Under the pieces are notes generated by a model that saw only the letters and a program-made list of their open reading frames with translations, was not told where the DNA came from and made no database searches. Of a DNA stretch of 64,000 nt, positions 31,725 to 60,909 are shown one piece after another (the first letter of the stretch is position 1; each line of letters opens with the position of its first letter). This DNA is from Mantamonas sphyraenae STR306 (taxonomy: Eukaryota > Protista > CRuMs), in assembly GCA_026936335.1 (NCBI GenBank), contig JAPMXV010000035.1, positions 62,001 through 126,000 on the forward strand. Direction: 5' to 3'. Both the position numbers and the translations under genes were made by a program.

Positions 31725-31742
31725 TCACGCATCCACATCCAC

Positions 31743-31988
31743 ATGACGCTCACATTGGTGGTCATCACTCCCGAGGGTCAGGAGAACGAGTCCTACCCGA
31801 TTGACTTTGAGATTGCAAACAGCGTGGGAGAGTTCCGTGCTGTGGCGTGCGAACTCACGGGACGCGCTCAATTGAGGCTCATTTTCGCAGGCAGGGTCCT
31901 CAACAACGACGAATCCCGCTTGGTGGACACAGGCGTGAGCAAAGAGAGCACCCTGCATGCACTTCCTGTGGCTGACGGCCAGGAGTGA
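31743..31988 (+). CDS. Stand-alone ubiquitin-like domain protein (81 aa) without C-terminal di-Gly
   Basis: SVGEFR...QLRLIFAGRVLNNDESRLVDTGVSKESTLH follows the ubiquitin pattern; ends PVADGQE*. Confidence 0.75.
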   Translation: MTLTLVVITPEGQENESYPIDFEIANSVGEFRAVACELTGRAQLRLIFAGRVLNNDESRLVDTGVSKESTLHALPVADGQE

Positions 31989-32098
31989 CACTTGCAGCTG
32001 GCCAAAACACGTTTGCAGAAAAATCCAAAACGCGACTTCATCCTTCGCCGCGACTCTCGCTCCCACGCGCACCCTCCCTCCCCCGTGCCCATCGATCA

Positions 32099-32893
32099 TC
32101 ACTTGTCAAACGTGAGACCGCGCTTCATAATCTCCTGAAGCTCCTGCTGTCGCTCCCTTGCCCTGATCCTCCTGTTGGAGAACCAGCCGTTGAGCTGCTT
32201 GAGGGTCAGCTTGCGGTCGCCCAGGTGGACGTTTTGGTTGGCCTCATCCAACAGCTTCTGCTTCTGTTGGGCCGTGGGGAAGGGTCGCGAGAGATGTGCG
32301 TTGAACCAGGTGGTCATCACCTCCACCGCAGTGTCGGACAGTGGGTTTTTGCTACGAGACTTGCCGTTGGGGTTGTATGGCACAATGGTGGTCTCCTTGA
32401 AGGTTTGCAGGCTTCGTTGCAGCTGAGCGTTGTTTGAGTTCTCGAGAACCGAGGTGTTTGCCCTCTCGTTGGCAGCCTCGTTGGCAGCACACTGCCGGAG
32501 TCGTTGCAGGCCATGGATGATGGCCAGGCGTTGTTGCTGCACCTCCAGCTCACTGTCGGCTGATTCCATGGTCGATGAAGAGGACGACGACGTGTTGGCA
32601 AGCTCAACCATCTTCTTGGCGGCGGTGGCAAACGCGGCGAGGATCTGCTTCCCGCGAATGTTGTCCTCATGCAGTCCCAGGTCGCTGGCTTCCAATTGCA
32701 TCAGCTTGTCGGTTTCCTCGGTGTATTCGCTCATTGTCATCGTCTGCGTGGGCACCTGGGCAAAGCCCAAGCTTGGGTCGGCTGTCTGCGCATCAGACAA
32801 GATCTTGTCTCGCACAGCACTCAACGAGATCGAAGAGCGTTCTCGCTTCCTTTCAGACTTTACTTCGTAGCCTTCGAGCTTGGGCAGGGTCAT
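32099..32893 (-). CDS. TALE homeodomain protein A (264 aa, intronless), PBX-like helix 3, 9-aa insertion between helices 2 and 3
   Basis: MTLPKLEGYEV start at 32893; TAVEVMTTWFNAHLSRPFPTAQQKQKLLDEANQNVHLGDRKLTLKQLNGWFSNRRIR. Confidence 0.88.
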   Translation of the reverse strand: MTLPKLEGYEVKSERKRERSSISLSAVRDKILSDAQTADPSLGFAQVPTQTMTMSEYTEETDKLMQLEASDLGLHEDNIRGKQILAAFATAAKKMVELANTSSSSSSTMESADSELEVQQQRLAIIHGLQRLRQCAANEAANERANTSVLENSNNAQLQRSLQTFKETTIVPYNPNGKSRSKNPLSDTAVEVMTTWFNAHLSRPFPTAQQKQKLLDEANQNVHLGDRKLTLKQLNGWFSNRRIRARERQQELQEIMKRGLTFDK

Positions 32894-32963
32894 TCTGGAT
32901 TGATTGGATGCGTGTGCGCGGGATCGAGACCAACTTTGGAAAGCGAGACGCAGTGGTTGCATC
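32894..32963. promoter_or_regulatory. 70-bp bidirectional spacer between the two homeobox genes, containing GGATTGATTGGATG
   Basis: ATG-to-ATG distance seen directly. The motif reads CCAATCAATCC on the minus strand (CCAAT box) and contains TGATTG, which resembles a PBX half-site; function inferred. Confidence 0.5.
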
Positions 32964-33602
32964 ATGCTGCCCAAACTCCCTGGATACCAGGTTGTACCCG
33001 AAGTATCCATCTCTGCTGAAGACCACCCTCTCACAGAGGTCCGGGACTTGATTGCAAAGTACTGCGTGTCCGAGATCGAGTCGCAGAAGTGGTTGACAAA
33101 AAGGAAGATTCAGAAAAAGCTCCAGCAGCTGCTCGACGAACGGAAAGAGGCACTCCAAGACTGCATAGGAATCAGTGACGTACTGGACGCAAATTTGAAA
33201 GAAGCCATCGGAGCCACCATCTCCTCAGCCCTCCGCACATCCAAGGCTCTGAAACAACTCACGTCGCAAATGGCACGGATCACGCTGGAGGTGAAGGACA
33301 GCGAAACAACTACGGCCAAAGAGGAAAGCGGAAGCAGAAAGCGCACCATTTCCATCCCCAACAACTCCATGGCCAACCTGTTCAACCCAGAAGACTCACG
33401 TCGCAAGCGCAAGCGACTCCCCAAGACTGCCGTTGAGGTGATGACCACGTGGATGTTTGACCACAAGGACTTCCCCTACCCAACCCACGAGGAAAAGGTG
33501 GATCTGGCCGAACGCGGAGGCTGCACCATCCGCCAACTGGACAATTGGATGATCAACTTTCGCCGTCGCCGCGGCCGGGAGCTCGCAATCAGCAAGAAAT
33601 GA
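32964..33602 (+). CDS. TALE homeodomain protein B (212 aa, intronless), MEIS/KNOX-like Ile50 with divergent helix 3
   Basis: MLPKLPGYQV start at 32964; RRKRKRLPKTAVEVMTTWMFDHKDFPYPTHEEKVDLAERGGCTIRQLDNWMINFRRRR. Confidence 0.92.
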   Translation: MLPKLPGYQVVPEVSISAEDHPLTEVRDLIAKYCVSEIESQKWLTKRKIQKKLQQLLDERKEALQDCIGISDVLDANLKEAIGATISSALRTSKALKQLTSQMARITLEVKDSETTTAKEESGSRKRTISIPNNSMANLFNPEDSRRKRKRLPKTAVEVMTTWMFDHKDFPYPTHEEKVDLAERGGCTIRQLDNWMINFRRRRGRELAISKK

Positions 33603-33670
33603 GTCACATCACACACACACACACACACACACACAACACATAGCCACTTTTCCATTGTTGCACCTGCGTT

Positions 33671-35995
33671 TTACTCTTCAGCTGCAGCAAACTCGCCGCT
33701 GTTTGTGGTCGCCTCCTCCTCCTTCACGCCATCCCACCACGCCAGCCTATCCAGGGCCAGATGGAGACGCAGATGGAGACGGAACTCAAAGTTGTATCCT
33801 TTGCACTTTTTCGCATTCTTGAAGCACTGACGAGCCTGTGCAAAGAGCTTTGTGCGGTCGTCGGACGCCTCCTGCTTCTCCTCTGCCACCTGCTTCATGA
33901 TCACATAGCCACTCTCGTACCAGGCATACGGCACAATCCACGACTCGCTGTCAATGCTCTTTTCCAGCTCCAAAGCACTTGCCAACGCAGCCTCGGCCTC
34001 GTCGTACTGCGCCAGATTCTTCAGCAACGCACCCTTCAGCAGATGCAACAGCGCCTGCTCATCTGCACTCGTGGCCAGTTCCGTGGCCGCCTCCACCTGC
34101 GCTTGAAAGACGTGCAACTCGTCGTGGCCCATCTGGGAGAAGCCGTTCCACAGGTAGATCATCTCCACCGCAGGCAGCAACATACGATGGCTCTCTGACG
34201 TGCAATACACGTCGATCTTGCGCAACACATACTGCTCGACACTGAGCACGCGTCCGCCAAACTTGCGCAGGGGCAACTCCTTGATGGTGGCCAGGATGGG
34301 CCATGCCTCGTTGGCATACTCCTCCGGCTTTTCCGTCAGCACACACACCGCCTGCGCATACAAGTAGAATGCCTTGCTCCACGAATTCTCCTCTGCCAGC
34401 TGCTGCCAGTATGGCTGCGCTTGGGACCACTCCTGTTCAAACATGTGACACCAGGCCAGTTCGTACGCGCAGAGGTGCTGCAAGGGAGCCCAGTCGGGCT
34501 GGGCCTCGCCTGCCACACGGAAGGCAGCCACAGAACGGTCCACCCTGCGACGCAGGCGTTGCAAGCGTCCGTTCATCCAATGGTACAGGGCACATCGAGG
34601 GAAGCGAGCGAGGCCATCCTGGAGGACCTCGGCGGCCTGGATGGTGTGCAGGTCTCCGGGCAGGGAGAAGAAGGAAGGCACGATAATGTAAAAGAAACCC
34701 AACATGAGAGTGGCCAGGGGCCCTCGGATGCCCTCCAACTTGTGGGTGGACACCACCTCGAAGAAGCCCGTGTCACGTTCGGCCGGGAAGCCAAAGAACT
34801 TGACGATGCGAAGGACAATGGGTGGGAGCACAGAGACGACCAGGTTGAAGGTGCCCACACCAAAGTGGATGCCACCTTCCACGTTGTAGTCCATCAACCC
34901 ATTGGGATTGTACTCCTCCAGGCCTCCCTGGGTGTCAAAGCCCTCGGGTTGGGGAAAGTGCACGTCCAGGCAGTGCCGCAGGTCCGTGCGACTGTTGGCA
35001 TACATCTTCCACGCATTGCGCATGTTCAATCCCCCCTTGGCATAGCTCACCAGGTTCTCCTGCAGGAATTGCAGCATGCCCGTCAGAAGGCGCGATTCGC
35101 CTGTGATCAGGCGCAAGTGCAACACTGCCGCGTCGTGGTCGGCGTCCGCACGCTTCTGCTCCTCCTCACGCTCCATCCACTCCTTCCACCGCGCCTCATC
35201 GGCTTCCTGCTGTGACACACCTCCGTTGCCCCAGGAGCTGAACCACGAGTTGGATCGACCCTTGCGCGACGACGACGACGTCGACGAGCCGCCTTCACCC
35301 ACCGCCTCCTTCACCAAACTGCCCTTGCGTTTGCTCGAGGACCCACTGCTGCTGCTGCCAGCGGCCCCTCCAGCCCCGTGCACGCTGTCCGGCACATAGA
35401 TACTGTCTGCCAGCAATTTGTTGTCCTGTGCATGGGCGACAATGGGCCGTGTAGGGCGTGGGTTGGTGTGTGTGTGTTTTGTGTCAGCGACCCTCTTCAC
35501 CCGCCGTCCCCCCCGGTGCCTCATTTTTGCGTCCCATCGCCCACCACTCACCTTGTCGAGCTCCTTCTGTGCATAGGTGCACACATCCTCCAGCCGTTGC
35601 ACAGCCACGTCCATGTCATCCTCCTGGAAGGTCATCACGGCGCGGATCATGGCCAGTGCCGCCCAGCCGTGCATAAAGATCGGTGCCCGTTCTGCGCGTT
35701 CGCCAAAGAACTCTTCGGCCTCTGCAAACTGGTTGTGCATGAAGAACAGTGCCTCTCCTTCCTCCACCTCCTTGTTTGTCTCTGTGCTGTATGCCTGCGG
35801 GTTGCGTTCCAGGCATGTGGGCAGCATCGACACTCCCGACCGCAGCAAGTGCGCCTCCTCTCCGTCCAGCAGTGTCTCCACCAAATCGTCCTCATCCCCA
35901 CCATCAGCACCAACCACCACTCCCGTCGTCGTCACTTCCACACCCGTGTCCTGTGCCTCAAAGAATTCGTCGTCCGACGAGTCAGAGTCGGACAT
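33671..35995 (-). CDS. TTC39: TTC39/Iml2 family TPR protein
   Basis: AMIRAVMTFQEDDM, YAKGGLNMRNAW, GIHFGVGTFNLVVSVLPP, HLCAYELAWC, ENSWSKAFY, GYNFEFRLHLR; in-frame intron about 35551-35426. Confidence 0.92.
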   Translation of the reverse strand: MSDSDSSDDEFFEAQDTGVEVTTTGVVVGADGGDEDDLVETLLDGEEAHLLRSGVSMLPTCLERNPQAYSTETNKEVEEGEALFFMHNQFAEAEEFFGERAERAPIFMHGWAALAMIRAVMTFQEDDMDVAVQRLEDVCTYAQKELDKVSGGRWDAKMRHRGGRRVKRVADTKHTHTNPRPTRPIVAHAQDNKLLADSIYVPDSVHGAGGAAGSSSSGSSSKRKGSLVKEAVGEGGSSTSSSSRKGRSNSWFSSWGNGGVSQQEADEARWKEWMEREEEQKRADADHDAAVLHLRLITGESRLLTGMLQFLQENLVSYAKGGLNMRNAWKMYANSRTDLRHCLDVHFPQPEGFDTQGGLEEYNPNGLMDYNVEGGIHFGVGTFNLVVSVLPPIVLRIVKFFGFPAERDTGFFEVVSTHKLEGIRGPLATLMLGFFYIIVPSFFSLPGDLHTIQAAEVLQDGLARFPRCALYHWMNGRLQRLRRRVDRSVAAFRVAGEAQPDWAPLQHLCAYELAWCHMFEQEWSQAQPYWQQLAEENSWSKAFYLYAQAVCVLTEKPEEYANEAWPILATIKELPLRKFGGRVLSVEQYVLRKIDVYCTSESHRMLLPAVEMIYLWNGFSQMGHDELHVFQAQVEAATELATSADEQALLHLLKGALLKNLAQYDEAEAALASALELEKSIDSESWIVPYAWYESGYVIMKQVAEEKQEASDDRTKLFAQARQCFKNAKKCKGYNFEFRLHLRLHLALDRLAWWDGVKEEEATTNSGEFAAAEE

Positions 35996-55478: not shown

Positions 55479-58422
55479 TCAACACCTCTCGAAAATCTTG
55501 TACAGTTTGTGCAGGTCAGCCACTTGTGTGAAGGTGCCGTCGGTAGCCAGAGTTTTGCCAGGAAGAAGGCTCTTGCGCATGCCTGGGAACAGGACATGCT
55601 TGAGAATGTGGCGGTAGTGACCCGGTTGGGCTTGCTGCGCCATGTCGTTGCTTGAGCGAGGCTTGTCTGCCTCCGTCTCACCGATGGCCAGCTGCTCGGC
55701 TGCCAACGGGGTGCCTGTTTCACTCGCATCCATGGGCAGGAGCGCATAAAAGCGAGCAATGGCCTGGAGCAGTGTGTGGAAGCAGGCCTGCTCCTCATTC
55801 CACTCCACGGTGGTCGCCATCCAGAAGAGCAGCTGCGGCAGATAGTCCATGCAAGGCACGTAGCCGTCCAGGATCTCTGGCAGCGACGTCAGCATGCCGT
55901 GTTCGTTGATGCCAATGGACAAGTAGTCGTCCAACATCGGGGCTCGCTCTATCAGCAGCTGCCGAACGCTGGTCACAAACTCCTCCTTGTCACCGTTCTG
56001 CGCATCGTCCCAGGCATTTACAGGCGCACTCAGAGCCAACCGCAACAGTCTGTCGACAGCCACAGGCGGCTCGATGGCGATGCTGCCAAAGTTCTGCCAC
56101 TTCTGCAGACCCAGTTGGTAGAACAGGGCCCTGCTCAACTCGCCAGCATCCACCACAAACAGGCGTGTTTGGTGTTGCAGCAACACATTGCGCCTGTCCG
56201 CGGCGCCCACGTACACATGGCCGTCAATCACCTCGCACAGATCCTTGTGTGCGTTGCTTTCCACACCACTGATCAGGTTGTGGATGCTTGTCAGGTACAC
56301 CGGTCGTACCTTGCGCTTTTTCTTTGCAGGCTCACTTGTCGATCCTGATCCTGTCGTCTGGGACGTCGTCGATGCCTCAGGTTGGGGCGTTGGAAGCGGT
56401 GGAGCAGGAGACGACGACGAAGATGATGACGACGACGTTGATGATGACACCAGTGGATCGGCTGCTGCAAACGCGGCCATGGTAGGAGGAGCAGTCGAAG
56501 AGGCCGTAGTGGTGGTGGTGCTGGATCCGATCTGCGTCTCAACGTCCATGTGTCTCTCTGCGTCGCCCTGCACGGCGTCGGCAGAGTCCAGTCCATCGTC
56601 CACGTCGTTTGGACCCACCGCCTGTGCGACCATGTCCTCTGTCGGGTCATGCCGTTGGATGGCCTCCTGTCCAGCGACTGTGTCGCGAGGGGCAGGGAAC
56701 AGCGACACAAAGGTGTCTTCATCGTCCTGCGTGCTCTCATTGTCGTTCTCCCCATCCTGCTCTTCCCTGCCTCGTTTCCGAGATGCCTGTGACACAGATG
56801 CATCACTAGCAATGCTTTCTTCGTCGGCTGTGCCGTTTCTCTCTGTGGCTGACGCTGCGTGTGTGTCCTGCACTTCCATGGATGGCTCCCCAATGGTGTC
56901 TGTGTGTGTGGGCACCGAACGCACATACTTTTCCATGTCTCCATGCTGCTGCCCAGCGTGCGTGCGCACCATGTTGTACTCTTGCACACGCTTTGCAGGC
57001 TGTCCGCTTGACGATGCCTGGCTGCTGGTCGCCTCCACGTCCATACCCGCCGCCGCTACGCCAGATCCGTCGCCCTGTGGGCCATGCTGCAGACTGGGCA
57101 CATACTTGTTGATTGCACTCTGTGTGTAGTATGTCCTGCTGTCGTTGGAGCCCAGCAACTTGTCCTGCAGGGCGTCCTGGATGTGTTCGATGATGGCGTC
57201 CTGGTGTAGGAAGTGCACCTCGCGCTTGGTGGGATGCACGTTGACATCCACGTTCTCTGCTGGCAGCTGCAGGTCCAGGTAGGCAAAGGGGTGTGTGTTT
57301 TTGGGCAGGTACTGAGTGTACACGGCGTGGACGGCCTTCTTCAGCGCCCCACAGTCCACCAGCCGGTTGTTGATGAAGAGGATGAACTGGCTCTTCTTCA
57401 CACTGTAGTTGGCTTTGGACACATAGCCCTTGAGGGTGTACGGACTCATGTCCCGCTTGTTGGTTGCGCTTTCGCCACACTCAAACTCCAGCAGCTCTCG
57501 TGCCACCTGGATGGTGTATGCCGCACGTATGTTGTCCAATACAGACGCCCCCGGGTTGGTGTGCACGTCGCTCGATGTCTTGCCTGCCTTTTTCAGGGTG
57601 AAGCTGACCCCTGCGTAGCGGATGGAGTACTTGTTCATCACGTCCAGGATGCGGTTGTATTCGTCTGCTGCACTTCGGAACGCACGCAGACGTGTCTGGT
57701 TGTTGTAAAACAGGTCTTCCACGGTGATGGTGGTGCCTGTGAGTCCTGCACACGCTTTGGGTTCCTCCAGCAGCTTCGACGCGTCGTACGACGCCCTGTG
57801 ACGCCCTATGGTGTCAGACTGAGAACGGGGGAAAGGAGGGGCAGGAGAGACGTACCTGTATGCACATGTTTGTTCTGCTGTCTTGCTGACAATGGTCACA
57901 TGGGCCACGTGTGTGATGCTGGCCAGGGCTTCGCCACGGAAGCCAAAGGTGGCGAGCTTACCCAAGTCGTCGTACTCGCGCAGTTTCGACGTGGTGAACC
58001 GCTCGCACACCACAGGCAGATCGCCGTGCTGTGGTTTCACGTGTGTGGTTGGTGTGTTGGATACCAGCGTGTCCATAGAGCGTGTATGGGCAACGGGGAA
58101 AAGTGAGTGATCGCTGCAGGGAACCTGATCAGGAACAGCACAACCCTCCCCTCCCCTTCCCCCCTTGCCTCTTTGCACTTACATCAATTCCATGGCCGTT
58201 GTCCTGAATCTGCAACATCTTGAGGCCTCCCGACTTGACGGTGACGGTGATGGAGGTTGCACCAGCGTCCAGGGAGTTTTCGAGCATCTCCTTGAGGGCC
58301 GAGGCTGGGCGCACAATGACTTCGCCAGCAGCCACGCGGTTGATCACCTCCTGTTCCAACTTGCGGATGCGCCTTGGAGCAGGGTTCTCGGAGGCATCTG
58401 TCCCGTCGGCGGTGCTACTCAT
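55479..58422 (-). CDS. MLH1: DNA mismatch repair protein MLH1
   Basis: [60 protein letters not shown], invariant C-terminal LYKIFERC*; two introns near the 5' end. Confidence 0.98.
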
Positions 58423-58516: not shown

Positions 58517-60909
58517 ATGAGTTCAGGAATCGTCAACCTGAGCGAATTGGCCATGCAGTCACGTCGACAGGCGGCCCAAGGGCACGGAGAAGCAAACTCT
58601 GGGAGCGGAGGAGGAAGGAAGACGGAAACCGACCGCAGTCCAAGCCAGGCGGCCGCACAGCAGCATGGGGCCTCCTCAGTGCATGGGATACCACGCACGG
58701 GTAGTTTTGTCATCAACGGATCCACAGGCGTCGTGCAGCAGGGTGTGGCTGGCACCACATTCACAGGCTTCTTCAAGAAAATTAGCGGCGGGAGCGCACG
58801 CACGGAAGGCGTGCACGTACGAGGTGAGAGCGGCCAGAGGAGGGATGGATGGTCGGCCACACACTTGCCACGGTGTGGGGAAACCCATGGTGGATGTGTG
58901 TGGAGAGAAGTAGAGAGGAAAGGAGGTTGCGGAAGGGTGTGGGGAGGGCTGAGACAGAAGAGGAAGGAACAATCGGAGAGAGGAGAGGGAAGGAGAGGCA
59001 CTCACACAGAAGGGTGTGGACACGGACCCTGGCACATGCGGGCTGGGACGACATGCACATGCGGTTGCGGTTGACAGACGGGATTGCAGGGGATGCAGAT
59101 GGGGATGGGAAGCACGATGGGACGGAGGAAGAAGGGGAGAAAACGGGAGTTGGCGCGAAGAACGGCATCCATGCTGGAGCAGGGCAGGCATACGGGGGCA
59201 AGGGCGTGCCTGCGCATGTGGGTGGAAAGTACGTGTACGCAGTACACGGGCGAAACCATCATACGCAGGAAACAGAAGGAGGGCCAGGGATGCAACAGGT
59301 GGCAGGGAAAGGGAGAAACAGCGGGAGAAACGCACACTTGCGAGGAATGGGAGGTGGTGCAAGGGGAAGCACATCTGAGTGGGCACACGGACATGTGAAC
59401 GCAGGCGACGACAGGTGGCCATACACCATGGCCAATGTGCATGGCGAACAACGAACCAGTGGGATGGAGGAGCACCATCTGCTGGGCAGTGAGTACGACG
59501 ACGACGACGTGCTAAGTAGGTGGACTACGTGGGGGTGAGCAGGAGGTGGACAATGGGAGAGATGGACGACTGACACACACACACATCACACACACATCAC
59601 ACACATCACACACACAGGATCGCTGCCTACGGATCTGCCCTTGTACGTTTCGACCAGCGAAGACACCGAGTCACAACTGACCATGGACGGCATGGGTCGT
59701 GTCACCACGTCGATGATTGAGGAACGGATGAACACGCCATCGGAACTGTACGTGATGTCTCCGTATGGGAGCATCCGGCGTGAAGTGGTAGGAGGTGGAC
59801 AGGGGCAGGGACAAAGTGTACGCGTGGTGTACGGGCATGACCACAGCCAACCGAGTCATCAGGAACACATGTATAGCAACAGCAACGGCAGGGGGGCGAA
59901 CCACCACCGACAGAATCACCACAATCAACACACGCACGAGGACTTTACCATTGACGAACACGAGGTGGCGGCGTATTTTCCAGCATCGCCTACAGAGGAG
60001 GAGGAGCTGATGGCCAAGCACAGCTTTGACATTGGCGGCGGACAGACCAGCAACTTTACCATGGGAGGGAGCACCAGCACAAGCAAGACAAAGAAGAACA
60101 AGGGAAGCAAGAAGAAGCACAACCGCAACCACAACCACAACCACCAGAGTGCGCACACGGGACAGCCCTTGACTGTGCAACAAGCGCTACAAGCAGCCAA
60201 GATGCGGCAGACCATGCAGATGGAGGCATTGAACAGGAACCAGCCTCTGTACATCGACCAAACGATGGACCGTGACCGGTTCAATCCACAGCAAGCAGCA
60301 GCTCCAACGCGCAGAGAAGAGAGCCAAAGAGAGGCAGGTGAGCATGGGCAGGCGCATCAGCAGACGAAGCAGGAGGGCAGCCACGAGACAGTCGTGGTGA
60401 GTGCAGAGAATGTGACACCCACCAAGCGTGAGGCCATCCACACCGAGGAGGAGGACGACGACGATGACGATGGTTCCTGGGGATACGATGACAATGCTCG
60501 GGATGGTACTTATGGAGAGAAGCCCAAGCGGAAGAAAGCAAGACGCAGCAGCAGCGGCAAGAAGCGAAACGGAGAAGGAGCAGCAGCGCGACGCAAGTCG
60601 TACGCACAGGTCGGCATGGACGACGCCACTGCCCGCGCTGCCGCACTGCGCAACAAGAGACGCATGGCATTCACCAAGGAGGTGACATACAAGCTGCGCA
60701 GGTGGCTGTACTACCACGTGGACAAACCCTATCCGACGGAGGCGGAAAAGGTGGAGCTGATGGAAAACACCGACCTGGAACTGATCCAGATCAACAACTG
60801 GTTCATCAATGCCAGAAGACGCACCCTCAACACACTGCGCAAGCTCAGTGAGATGAAGGGGGGGGAAGCATTGACACAGCAAGAGGAAGAGAAGTATCTG
60901 TGGCCATGA
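58517..60909 (+). CDS. TALE homeodomain protein C (MEIS/KNOX/TGIF-type) with long disordered N-terminus
   Basis: [43 protein letters not shown]; frame-consistent exons 58517-58823, 59078-59515, 59618-60909. Confidence 0.88.

What the first reader, a model, noticed from the sequence alone, without database searches (positions are those of the whole stretch)
32099..33602. Head-to-head pair of paralogous TALE homeodomain genes: candidate mating-type (HD1/HD2-like) locus in a protist
Seen: two short intronless TALE homeobox genes are divergent with 70 bp between ATGs. One helix 3 is PBX-like (WFSNRRIR, compare PBX WFGNKRIR) and the other MEIS/KNOX-like (Ile50, WMINFRRR, plus EDHPL...KYC recalling the MEINOX HPL motif). 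Both have predicted helical N-terminal halves. Known: heterodimerising homeodomain pairs control the haploid-to-diploid switch (basidiomycete bE/bW and HD1/HD2 are divergently transcribed pairs; yeast a1/alpha2; Chlamydomonas GSP1/GSM1). In basidiomycetes only one partner is TALE-class, whereas here both are. Inference: an independently evolved self/non-self or zygote-programme locus. Caveat: tight head-to-head spacing is common in this window, so orientation alone proves little.
Basis: partly seen in the sequence, partly recalled or inferred. Interest (0 to 1): 0.9.

Follow-up and report, generated by a model that had tools for sequence, protein, structure and literature searches.

The report
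Fungal-style mating-type locus in a protist
In the deep-branching protist Mantamonas, two back-to-back homeobox genes each occur as two very different versions exactly in the part predicted to bind the partner protein, the pattern of the self/non-self mating-type locus so far described in mushrooms, smuts and rusts.

Summary
Observation confirmed. The genome matches diploid Mantamonas sphyraenae (CRuMs). Two intronless TALE homeobox genes (A, 264 aa; B, 212 aa) are divergent, 70 bp apart. A has a PBX-type recognition helix. B has a MEIS-type helix and an HP-x11-C motif in MEIS/KNOX register. New here: both public DNA runs show a second haplotype that is hyperdivergent only in the helical N-terminal halves. 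In B it has 26 substitutions in 97 bp, in frame, mostly amino-acid changing (about 27% against 0.2% in the next gene). In A, 73 bp (codons 12-36) do not align. Homeodomains are nearly identical between haplotypes, and the assembly has no second copy. This variable/constant, head-to-head anatomy is that of basidiomycete bE/bW (HD1/HD2), built from two TALE genes. Meiosis genes are present; TALE genes are few (8 hits). Best reading (about 0.6): a self/non-self locus whose cross-allele A-B dimers switch on the diploid programme. Not shown: dimerisation, mating, phasing, more alleles; the polymorphism control is only 4.2 kb. I found no paper and no earlier scan finding of this on other DNA.

The parts
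32099..32893 (-). Gene A: intronless TALE homeobox gene, 264 aa, PBX-type recognition helix (Ser50, Ile54, Arg55)
   Evidence: orthologue in Mantamonas plastica (P0001); RNA contigs at 32118-32317 and 32381-32722
32162..32308 (-). Homeobox_KN match of A (residues 196-244), with a 9-residue helix 2-3 insertion; no haplotype difference listed here
32788..32860 (-). Allele-variable segment of A (codons 12-36), right after the LPKL.GY.V motif; second haplotype does not align at 80%
   Evidence: table 5 (joint 32787-32861 in both DNA runs) and table 8
32861..32887 (-). N-terminal LPKL.GY.V motif of A, shared with B and partly with the M. plastica orthologue
   Evidence: (arms I2)
32894..32963 (.). 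70-bp intergenic region, presumed bidirectional promoter
   Evidence: promoter role is inference
32964..33602 (+). Gene B: intronless TALE homeobox gene, 212 aa, MEIS/KNOX-type recognition helix (Ile50, Arg54)
   Evidence: no RNA contig in the one shallow RNA run
33024..33065 (+). HP-x11-C (MEINOX / KN-A-like) motif, residues 21-34, at the start of the long N-terminal helix
33116..33212 (+). Allele-variable segment of B (codons 51-83): second haplotype has 26 substitutions and 4 one-base gaps of net zero length; at least 11 residue changes in residues 51-78
   Evidence: tables 3, 4, 8
33450..33569 (+). Homeobox_KN match of B (residues 163-202); no haplotype difference listed here

Best explanation
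A self/non-self (mating-type or compatibility) locus that works like the basidiomycete HD locus but is built from a PBX-type and a MEIS-type TALE gene. Shown: head-to-head pair, complementary recognition helices, helical N-terminal halves, and two versions in a diploid that differ strongly only in one N-terminal segment of each gene. Inferred: each haplotype carries a matched A/B pair whose variable segments prevent A1-B1 binding. After fusion of cells with different haplotypes, A1-B2 and A2-B1 heterodimers form through the N-terminal helices, bind composite TALE sites and start or license the diploid (zygote/meiosis-competent) programme. The two variable segments lie only about 255 bp apart, which would keep them from recombining into a self-compatible pair. 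Rare-allele advantage would keep the alleles old.
For: Bubbles at 32758-32915 (A) and 33086-33242 (B) in both DNA runs, two paths each, with depths 17.7/14.5 and 28.2/17.2 (X1), 19.6/39.9 and 28.9/39.1 (X2). B segment 26/97 sites against 5/2214 in the neighbouring TTC39 gene (Fisher p 7e-33; the segment was chosen after seeing the data). 7 of 9 changed codons before the first gap are non-synonymous, the frame is kept and no stop appears; Leu64, Leu74 and Leu78 are unchanged while neighbours vary. One copy only in the assembly at DNA and protein level. Strain diploid with 0.5/0.5 SNPs (PMC10492846). Mnd1, Hop2 and two Spo11-family genes present. Same anatomy defines bE/bW (PMC10601111; PMC2916851). 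TALE dyads drive haploid-to-diploid transitions elsewhere (PMC6219170, PMC6368402, PMC13353863).
Against: No sexual cycle, cyst or even dividing cell was seen in culture. No B transcript in the RNA run, although that run is shallow here (neighbour depth 4-6, fragmentary). HAP2 not found, in a search whose control also rang nowhere. Pfam PBC, Meis_PKNOX_N and KNOX models do not match. Variable segments are short (about 25-33 codons) compared with fungal variable domains of about 100-150 residues. Control region is only 4.2 kb, and FALCON's 6.4 Mb of associate contigs show the genome is heterozygous in many places. The alternate A segment could not be read, so its frame is unknown. Haplotypes are unphased. 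One strain only.
Confidence: 0.6

Rival explanations
1. A co-regulated PBX/MEIS-type heterodimer for a life-cycle or other switch, without allele discrimination. The divergent segments are co-evolving interface variants brought together by hybrid origin or old allelic divergence.
For: PBX/MEIS-type dyads are ancestral and widespread (PMC6219170). Tight head-to-head spacing is common here. The N-terminal halves evolve fast: A versus its M. plastica orthologue aligns only at p=0.02.
Against: A hybrid or long-asexual origin should raise divergence across genes, yet the homeodomains and TTC39 differ at well under 1% while both variable segments differ at roughly 25% or more.
Confidence: 0.22
2. 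The alternate contigs are not alleles but come from a second, unassembled or collapsed copy of the pair (a paralogue or silent cassette), or are tracts copied from such a donor by gene conversion.
For: Logan contigs are short and unphased, and their depth is not a copy number. The genome has inverted duplicates, for example the TALE gene on contig C27 at 98% identity.
Against: Both paths share the same flanks and have equal length in B. Flank depth (30-38 and 49-52) is not above the single-copy neighbour (41 and 53). No second copy in the assembly. The partial alternate B segment resembles neither gene A nor the rest of the window.
Confidence: 0.1
3. An ordinary lineage-specific inverted duplication of one TALE gene with relaxed selection on the N-terminal halves and no role in sex.
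For: Shared LPKL.GY.V and TAVEVMTTW motifs; N-halves align at p=0.005; A+B clade not rejected, p-AU 0.39.
Against: Relaxed selection does not create old, in-frame, localised allelic divergence in both genes at once. The recognition helices are of complementary types. A is conserved in M. plastica.
Confidence: 0.08

Closest known systems
Basidiomycete HD mating-type locus (Ustilago bE/bW, Coprinopsis/Agaricus HD1/HD2, rust b locus)
   Same: Two divergently transcribed homeodomain genes; allele-variable helical N-terminal region facing the short intergenic region; conserved homeodomains; heterozygous in the diploid or dikaryon (PMC10601111, PMC2916851, PMC8305134).
   Different: Here both partners are TALE-class (fungal HD2 is not), they are homologous in their N-terminal halves, the proteins are short with almost no C-terminal constant domain, the variable segments are about 25-33 codons, and the organism is a CRuMs protist. 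No Mating_N Pfam match; the ESM Atlas look-alike to an HD1 cluster scored 0.76-0.78, which is chance level.
TALE life-cycle dyads: Chlamydomonas GSP1/GSM1, Ectocarpus ORO/SAM, Galdieria BELL/KNOX, animal PBX/MEIS
   Same: One PBX-type and one MEIS/KNOX-type homeodomain; MEINOX-like HP-x11-C motif in the MEIS-type partner; N-terminal helical region.
   Different: In the papers read these partners are separate loci controlled by gamete- or phase-specific expression; none is described as a head-to-head pair with allele-specific N-terminal segments. PBC and KNOX/MEIS domain models do not match here.
Bostrychia moritziana sex-linked TALE pair (bioRxiv 10.1101/2025.02.11.637652)
   Same: A PBX-type and a KNOX-type TALE gene tied to a sex-determining region.
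   Different: There each sex chromosome carries one partner (U: PBX, V: KNOX); here each haplotype appears to carry both, so discrimination would have to be allelic.

Membership tests
TALE homeodomain superclass | Homeobox_KN domain with three-residue loop extension | tested here: met
   both above the Pfam cut-off; no gap against PBX/MEIS in the helix 1-2 loop
PBC/PBX class (gene A) | PBX-type helix 3 (WFGNKRIR) and homeodomain grouping | tested here: inconclusive
   WFSNRRIR (Ser50, not Gly50); best PDB and fold matches PBX/Exd; falls in a mixed clade with WFGN domains at 89/89, below the starred level
PBC/PBX class (gene A) | PBC domain (Pfam PF03792) in the N-terminal half | tested here: not met
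   no match in A, in P0001 or anywhere in the genome
PBC/PBX class (gene A) | PBL domain of Joo et al. 2018 | not tested
MEIS/KNOX (MEINOX) class (gene B) | Ile50 recognition helix of WFINARRR type | tested here: met
   WMINFRRR; best PDB matches PKNOX1/Meis, E about 1e-12
MEIS/KNOX (MEINOX) class (gene B) | KN-A / MEINOX motif HP-x11-C | tested here: inconclusive
   Exact register with P0046 and P0049; chance 5e-4 by shuffling, 3 chance hits in 76,802 background residues; but the conserved aromatic-Pro after HPL is missing and the local alignment is not significant (p 0.58)
MEIS/KNOX (MEINOX) class (gene B) | Full Meis_PKNOX_N, KNOX1/2 or ELK domain | tested here: not met
Basidiomycete-type HD mating locus | Divergently transcribed homeodomain gene pair | tested here: met
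   70 bp between ATGs
Basidiomycete-type HD mating locus | Allele-variable N-terminal regions with conserved homeodomains, heterozygous in the diploid | tested here: met
   two versions in one strain, unphased
Basidiomycete-type HD mating locus | One TALE-like HD1 plus one typical HD2 partner | tested here: not met
   Both are TALE; so it works like, but is not a member of, the fungal family
Basidiomycete-type HD mating locus | Heterodimer forms only between different alleles | not testable with these tools
   Needs two-hybrid or pull-down; no multimer prediction available
Basidiomycete-type HD mating locus | Many alleles in populations; segregation with mating compatibility | not testable with these tools
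   Only one strain in public runs; no relatives in metagenome scans

The most novel reading that the evidence does not exclude
Mantamonas, in the sister group of Amorphea, has a multiallelic homeodomain mating-type locus in which the ancestral PBX/MEIS-type TALE dyad itself does self/non-self recognition. This would be an HD-type locus outside fungi and either a striking convergence or a relic of how early eukaryotes checked gamete fusion.
Probability: 0.5. Interest if true: 0.93.

Novelty: new variant of a known kind. Interest (0 to 1): 0.86.

Why it matters
It has been proposed that TALE heterodimers arose to ensure that the diploid programme starts only after fusion of proper partners (PMC6219170). 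Allele-specific homeodomain recognition is described from fungi, where one partner is not TALE. A linked TALE/TALE pair with allele-specific N-terminal segments in a CRuMs protist would join these two observations, give genetic evidence for outcrossing sex in a lineage where sex has not been seen, and can be tested at once: four short intronless genes in a two-hybrid matrix.

Tried and rejected
Large TALE expansion: rejected, 8 Homeobox_KN hits (about 7 genes; a lower bound) and no close paralogue of A or B. Second genomic copy: none. Orthologue of B: not found by two word-based searches, a profile search whose top 150 was filled by multi-homeodomain proteins, or two metagenome scans; these blanks are weak. 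Synteny in M. plastica: no contig on record. Recent gene conversion between A and B: synonymous sites in the shared motifs often differ, so any conversion is old. Mating_N similarity in ESM Atlas: chance level. Structure searches recover only the homeodomain. A PBX-like site in the intergenic region: not above chance. Contaminating second species as source of the alternate contigs: rejected because homeodomains and flanks are nearly identical. Left out under the operators' rules: spliced TALE genes (L004, L007/L008, first exon of L001) were not joined and L004/L007/L008 were not put in the tree; the alternate-haplotype segments have no reference and were not sent to any search tool; the PBL/KN-A alignments of Joo et al. 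were read but not typed into a profile.

Full report
Verdict. Its key prediction was tested and met: both genes carry a hyperdivergent allelic segment in their N-terminal halves. The best reading is a self/non-self locus that works like the fungal HD mating-type locus (about 0.6). Function is not shown.

Organism. The assembly has 25,061,354 bases in 78 contigs, matching the FALCON assembly of Mantamonas sphyraenae (25.06 Mb, 78 contigs; PMC10492846). The only full-length relative found for gene A is a Mantamonas plastica protein, P0001. The paper reports a diploid with SNP frequencies near 0.5/0.5, a culture isolated by micropipette, and no cysts or dividing cells seen. No held paper contains both Mantamonas and homeobox.

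The pair. Gene A (32893..32099, minus, 264 aa) and gene B (32964..33602, plus, 212 aa) are intronless and 70 bp apart. Both pass Homeobox_KN. A matches Exd/PBX1 best and has a 9-residue helix 2-3 insertion absent from P0001. B matches PKNOX1/Meis best. In a 58-row homeodomain tree A and P0001 are sisters (99/99) and sit in a mixed clade with WFGN-type domains (89/89); B is unresolved outside it. Holding A and B together is not rejected (p-AU 0.39). B has HP-x11-C at residues 21-34 in register with a PKNOX-family and a KNOX-family protein and with the KN-A alignment of Joo et al.. Chance by shuffling is 5e-4, but the local alignment is not significant and no PBC, Meis_PKNOX_N or KNOX model matches. 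AlphaFold predicts one long helix for B residues 22-113 and several helices for A.

Relation of A to B. The N-terminal halves align weakly with each other (p=0.005), about as well as A with its own orthologue (p=0.02), and not with two other Mantamonas TALE proteins. They share LPKL.GY.V at the start and TAVEVMTTW in helix 1, where A is closer to B than to P0001. Synonymous sites in these motifs often differ. Inference: either a mantamonad inverted duplication followed by divergence of the recognition helices, or an old PBX/MEIS-type dyad with patchy, old gene conversion between the inverted arms. The data do not choose.

Context. The genome has 8 Homeobox_KN hits, including canonical WFINARRR and WFGNKRIR types elsewhere, and no close paralogue of A or B. 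Mnd1, Hop2 and two Spo11-family genes are present. The HAP2 search was uninformative. Other divergent pairs in the window have 87 and 94 bp between inferred starts, so orientation alone is weak evidence.

Decisive result. Contigs of public runs were laid on 31730-35900. X1 and X2 cover the whole stretch unspliced and behave as DNA runs; X3 skips the 126-bp intron of the neighbouring TTC39 gene and is therefore RNA. In both DNA runs gene B splits at 33086-33242 into two 157-bp contigs: one with 1 difference from the assembly, one with 26 substitutions and 4 one-base gaps of net zero length. In both, gene A splits at 32758-32915, and the alternate contig skips 32788-32860, which does not align at 80%. 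These are codons 51-83 of B and 12-36 of A. No difference is listed in either homeobox core. TTC39 differs at about 5 of 2214 sites and the rest of A at 5 of about 690. Applying the 18 listed substitutions and the gaps gives an open frame with at least 11 residue changes in B 51-78; 7 of 9 changed codons before the first gap are non-synonymous. Eight substitutions were not listed by the tool and probably lie at 33199-33212, so residues 79-83 are unknown. Depths of the two paths are of similar order and flank depth is not above the single-copy neighbour, consistent with two alleles, though contig depth is not a copy number. The RNA run has contigs on A (depth about 4) and none on B; it is shallow here, so absence is weak.

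Mechanism. Shown: anatomy, complementary recognition helices, localised two-version divergence in both N-terminal halves. From established knowledge: in rusts and smuts the N-terminal variable domains of the same allele prevent dimerisation and cross-allele dimers drive development (PMC10601111; PMC2916851); TALE dyads switch on diploid programmes in green, red and brown algae. Inferred: A1-B2 and A2-B1 dimers form after fusion of unlike cells and license the diploid programme; tight linkage of the two variable segments (about 255 bp apart) protects matched pairs from recombination.

Membership. TALE superclass: yes. PBC class and MEINOX class: resemblance in the homeodomain, defining N-terminal domains not met or inconclusive. 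Fungal HD locus: not a member, because both partners are TALE, but it shows two of that locus's hallmarks (divergent pair, variable N-termini with constant homeodomains).

Limits. One strain, unphased short contigs, a 4.2-kb control in a genome with 6.4 Mb of associate contigs, no orthologue of B found, no interaction data. Spliced models were not joined, alternate segments without a reference were not searched, and the published PBL alignment was not typed in.

Noticed in passing
window 58517-60909 (+) and 55479-58422 (-): A third TALE gene with canonical WFINARRR helix lies head-to-head with MLH1, 94 bp between inferred starts (first exon inferred). No MEINOX motif in its main exon.
   Followed up: partly
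RRM domains confirmed, Rim4 orthology not tested.
   Followed up: partly
window 31743-31988 (+): 81-aa ubiquitin-like ORF convergent with gene A; two non-synonymous haplotype differences; no RNA contig. The 31730-32787 side shows about 13 variant sites per kb against about 2 per kb in TTC39.
   Followed up: partly
L007/L008 (G000:C27:117210 and 127979): A WFGN-type TALE gene present twice in inverted orientation about 10 kb apart, 98% identical over 2.5 kb, with an apparent intron in codon 52 of the homeodomain.
   Followed up: no
L004 (G000:C36:203749): PBX-type TALE gene with an apparent intron at homeodomain position 44/45, the position Joo et al. regard as ancestral.
   Followed up: no
G000:C35: Four of the eight TALE hits in the genome are on this one contig (94.2, 95.5, 122.7 and 314.6 kb).
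   Followed up: no
L018 (G000:C25:234821): Long open frame with at least two tandem divergent homeodomain-like repeats.
   Followed up: no
window 32111, 32952, 33152: Both DNA runs differ from the assembly at these sites in the reference-like contigs; assembly errors or collapsed heterozygous sites.
   Followed up: no
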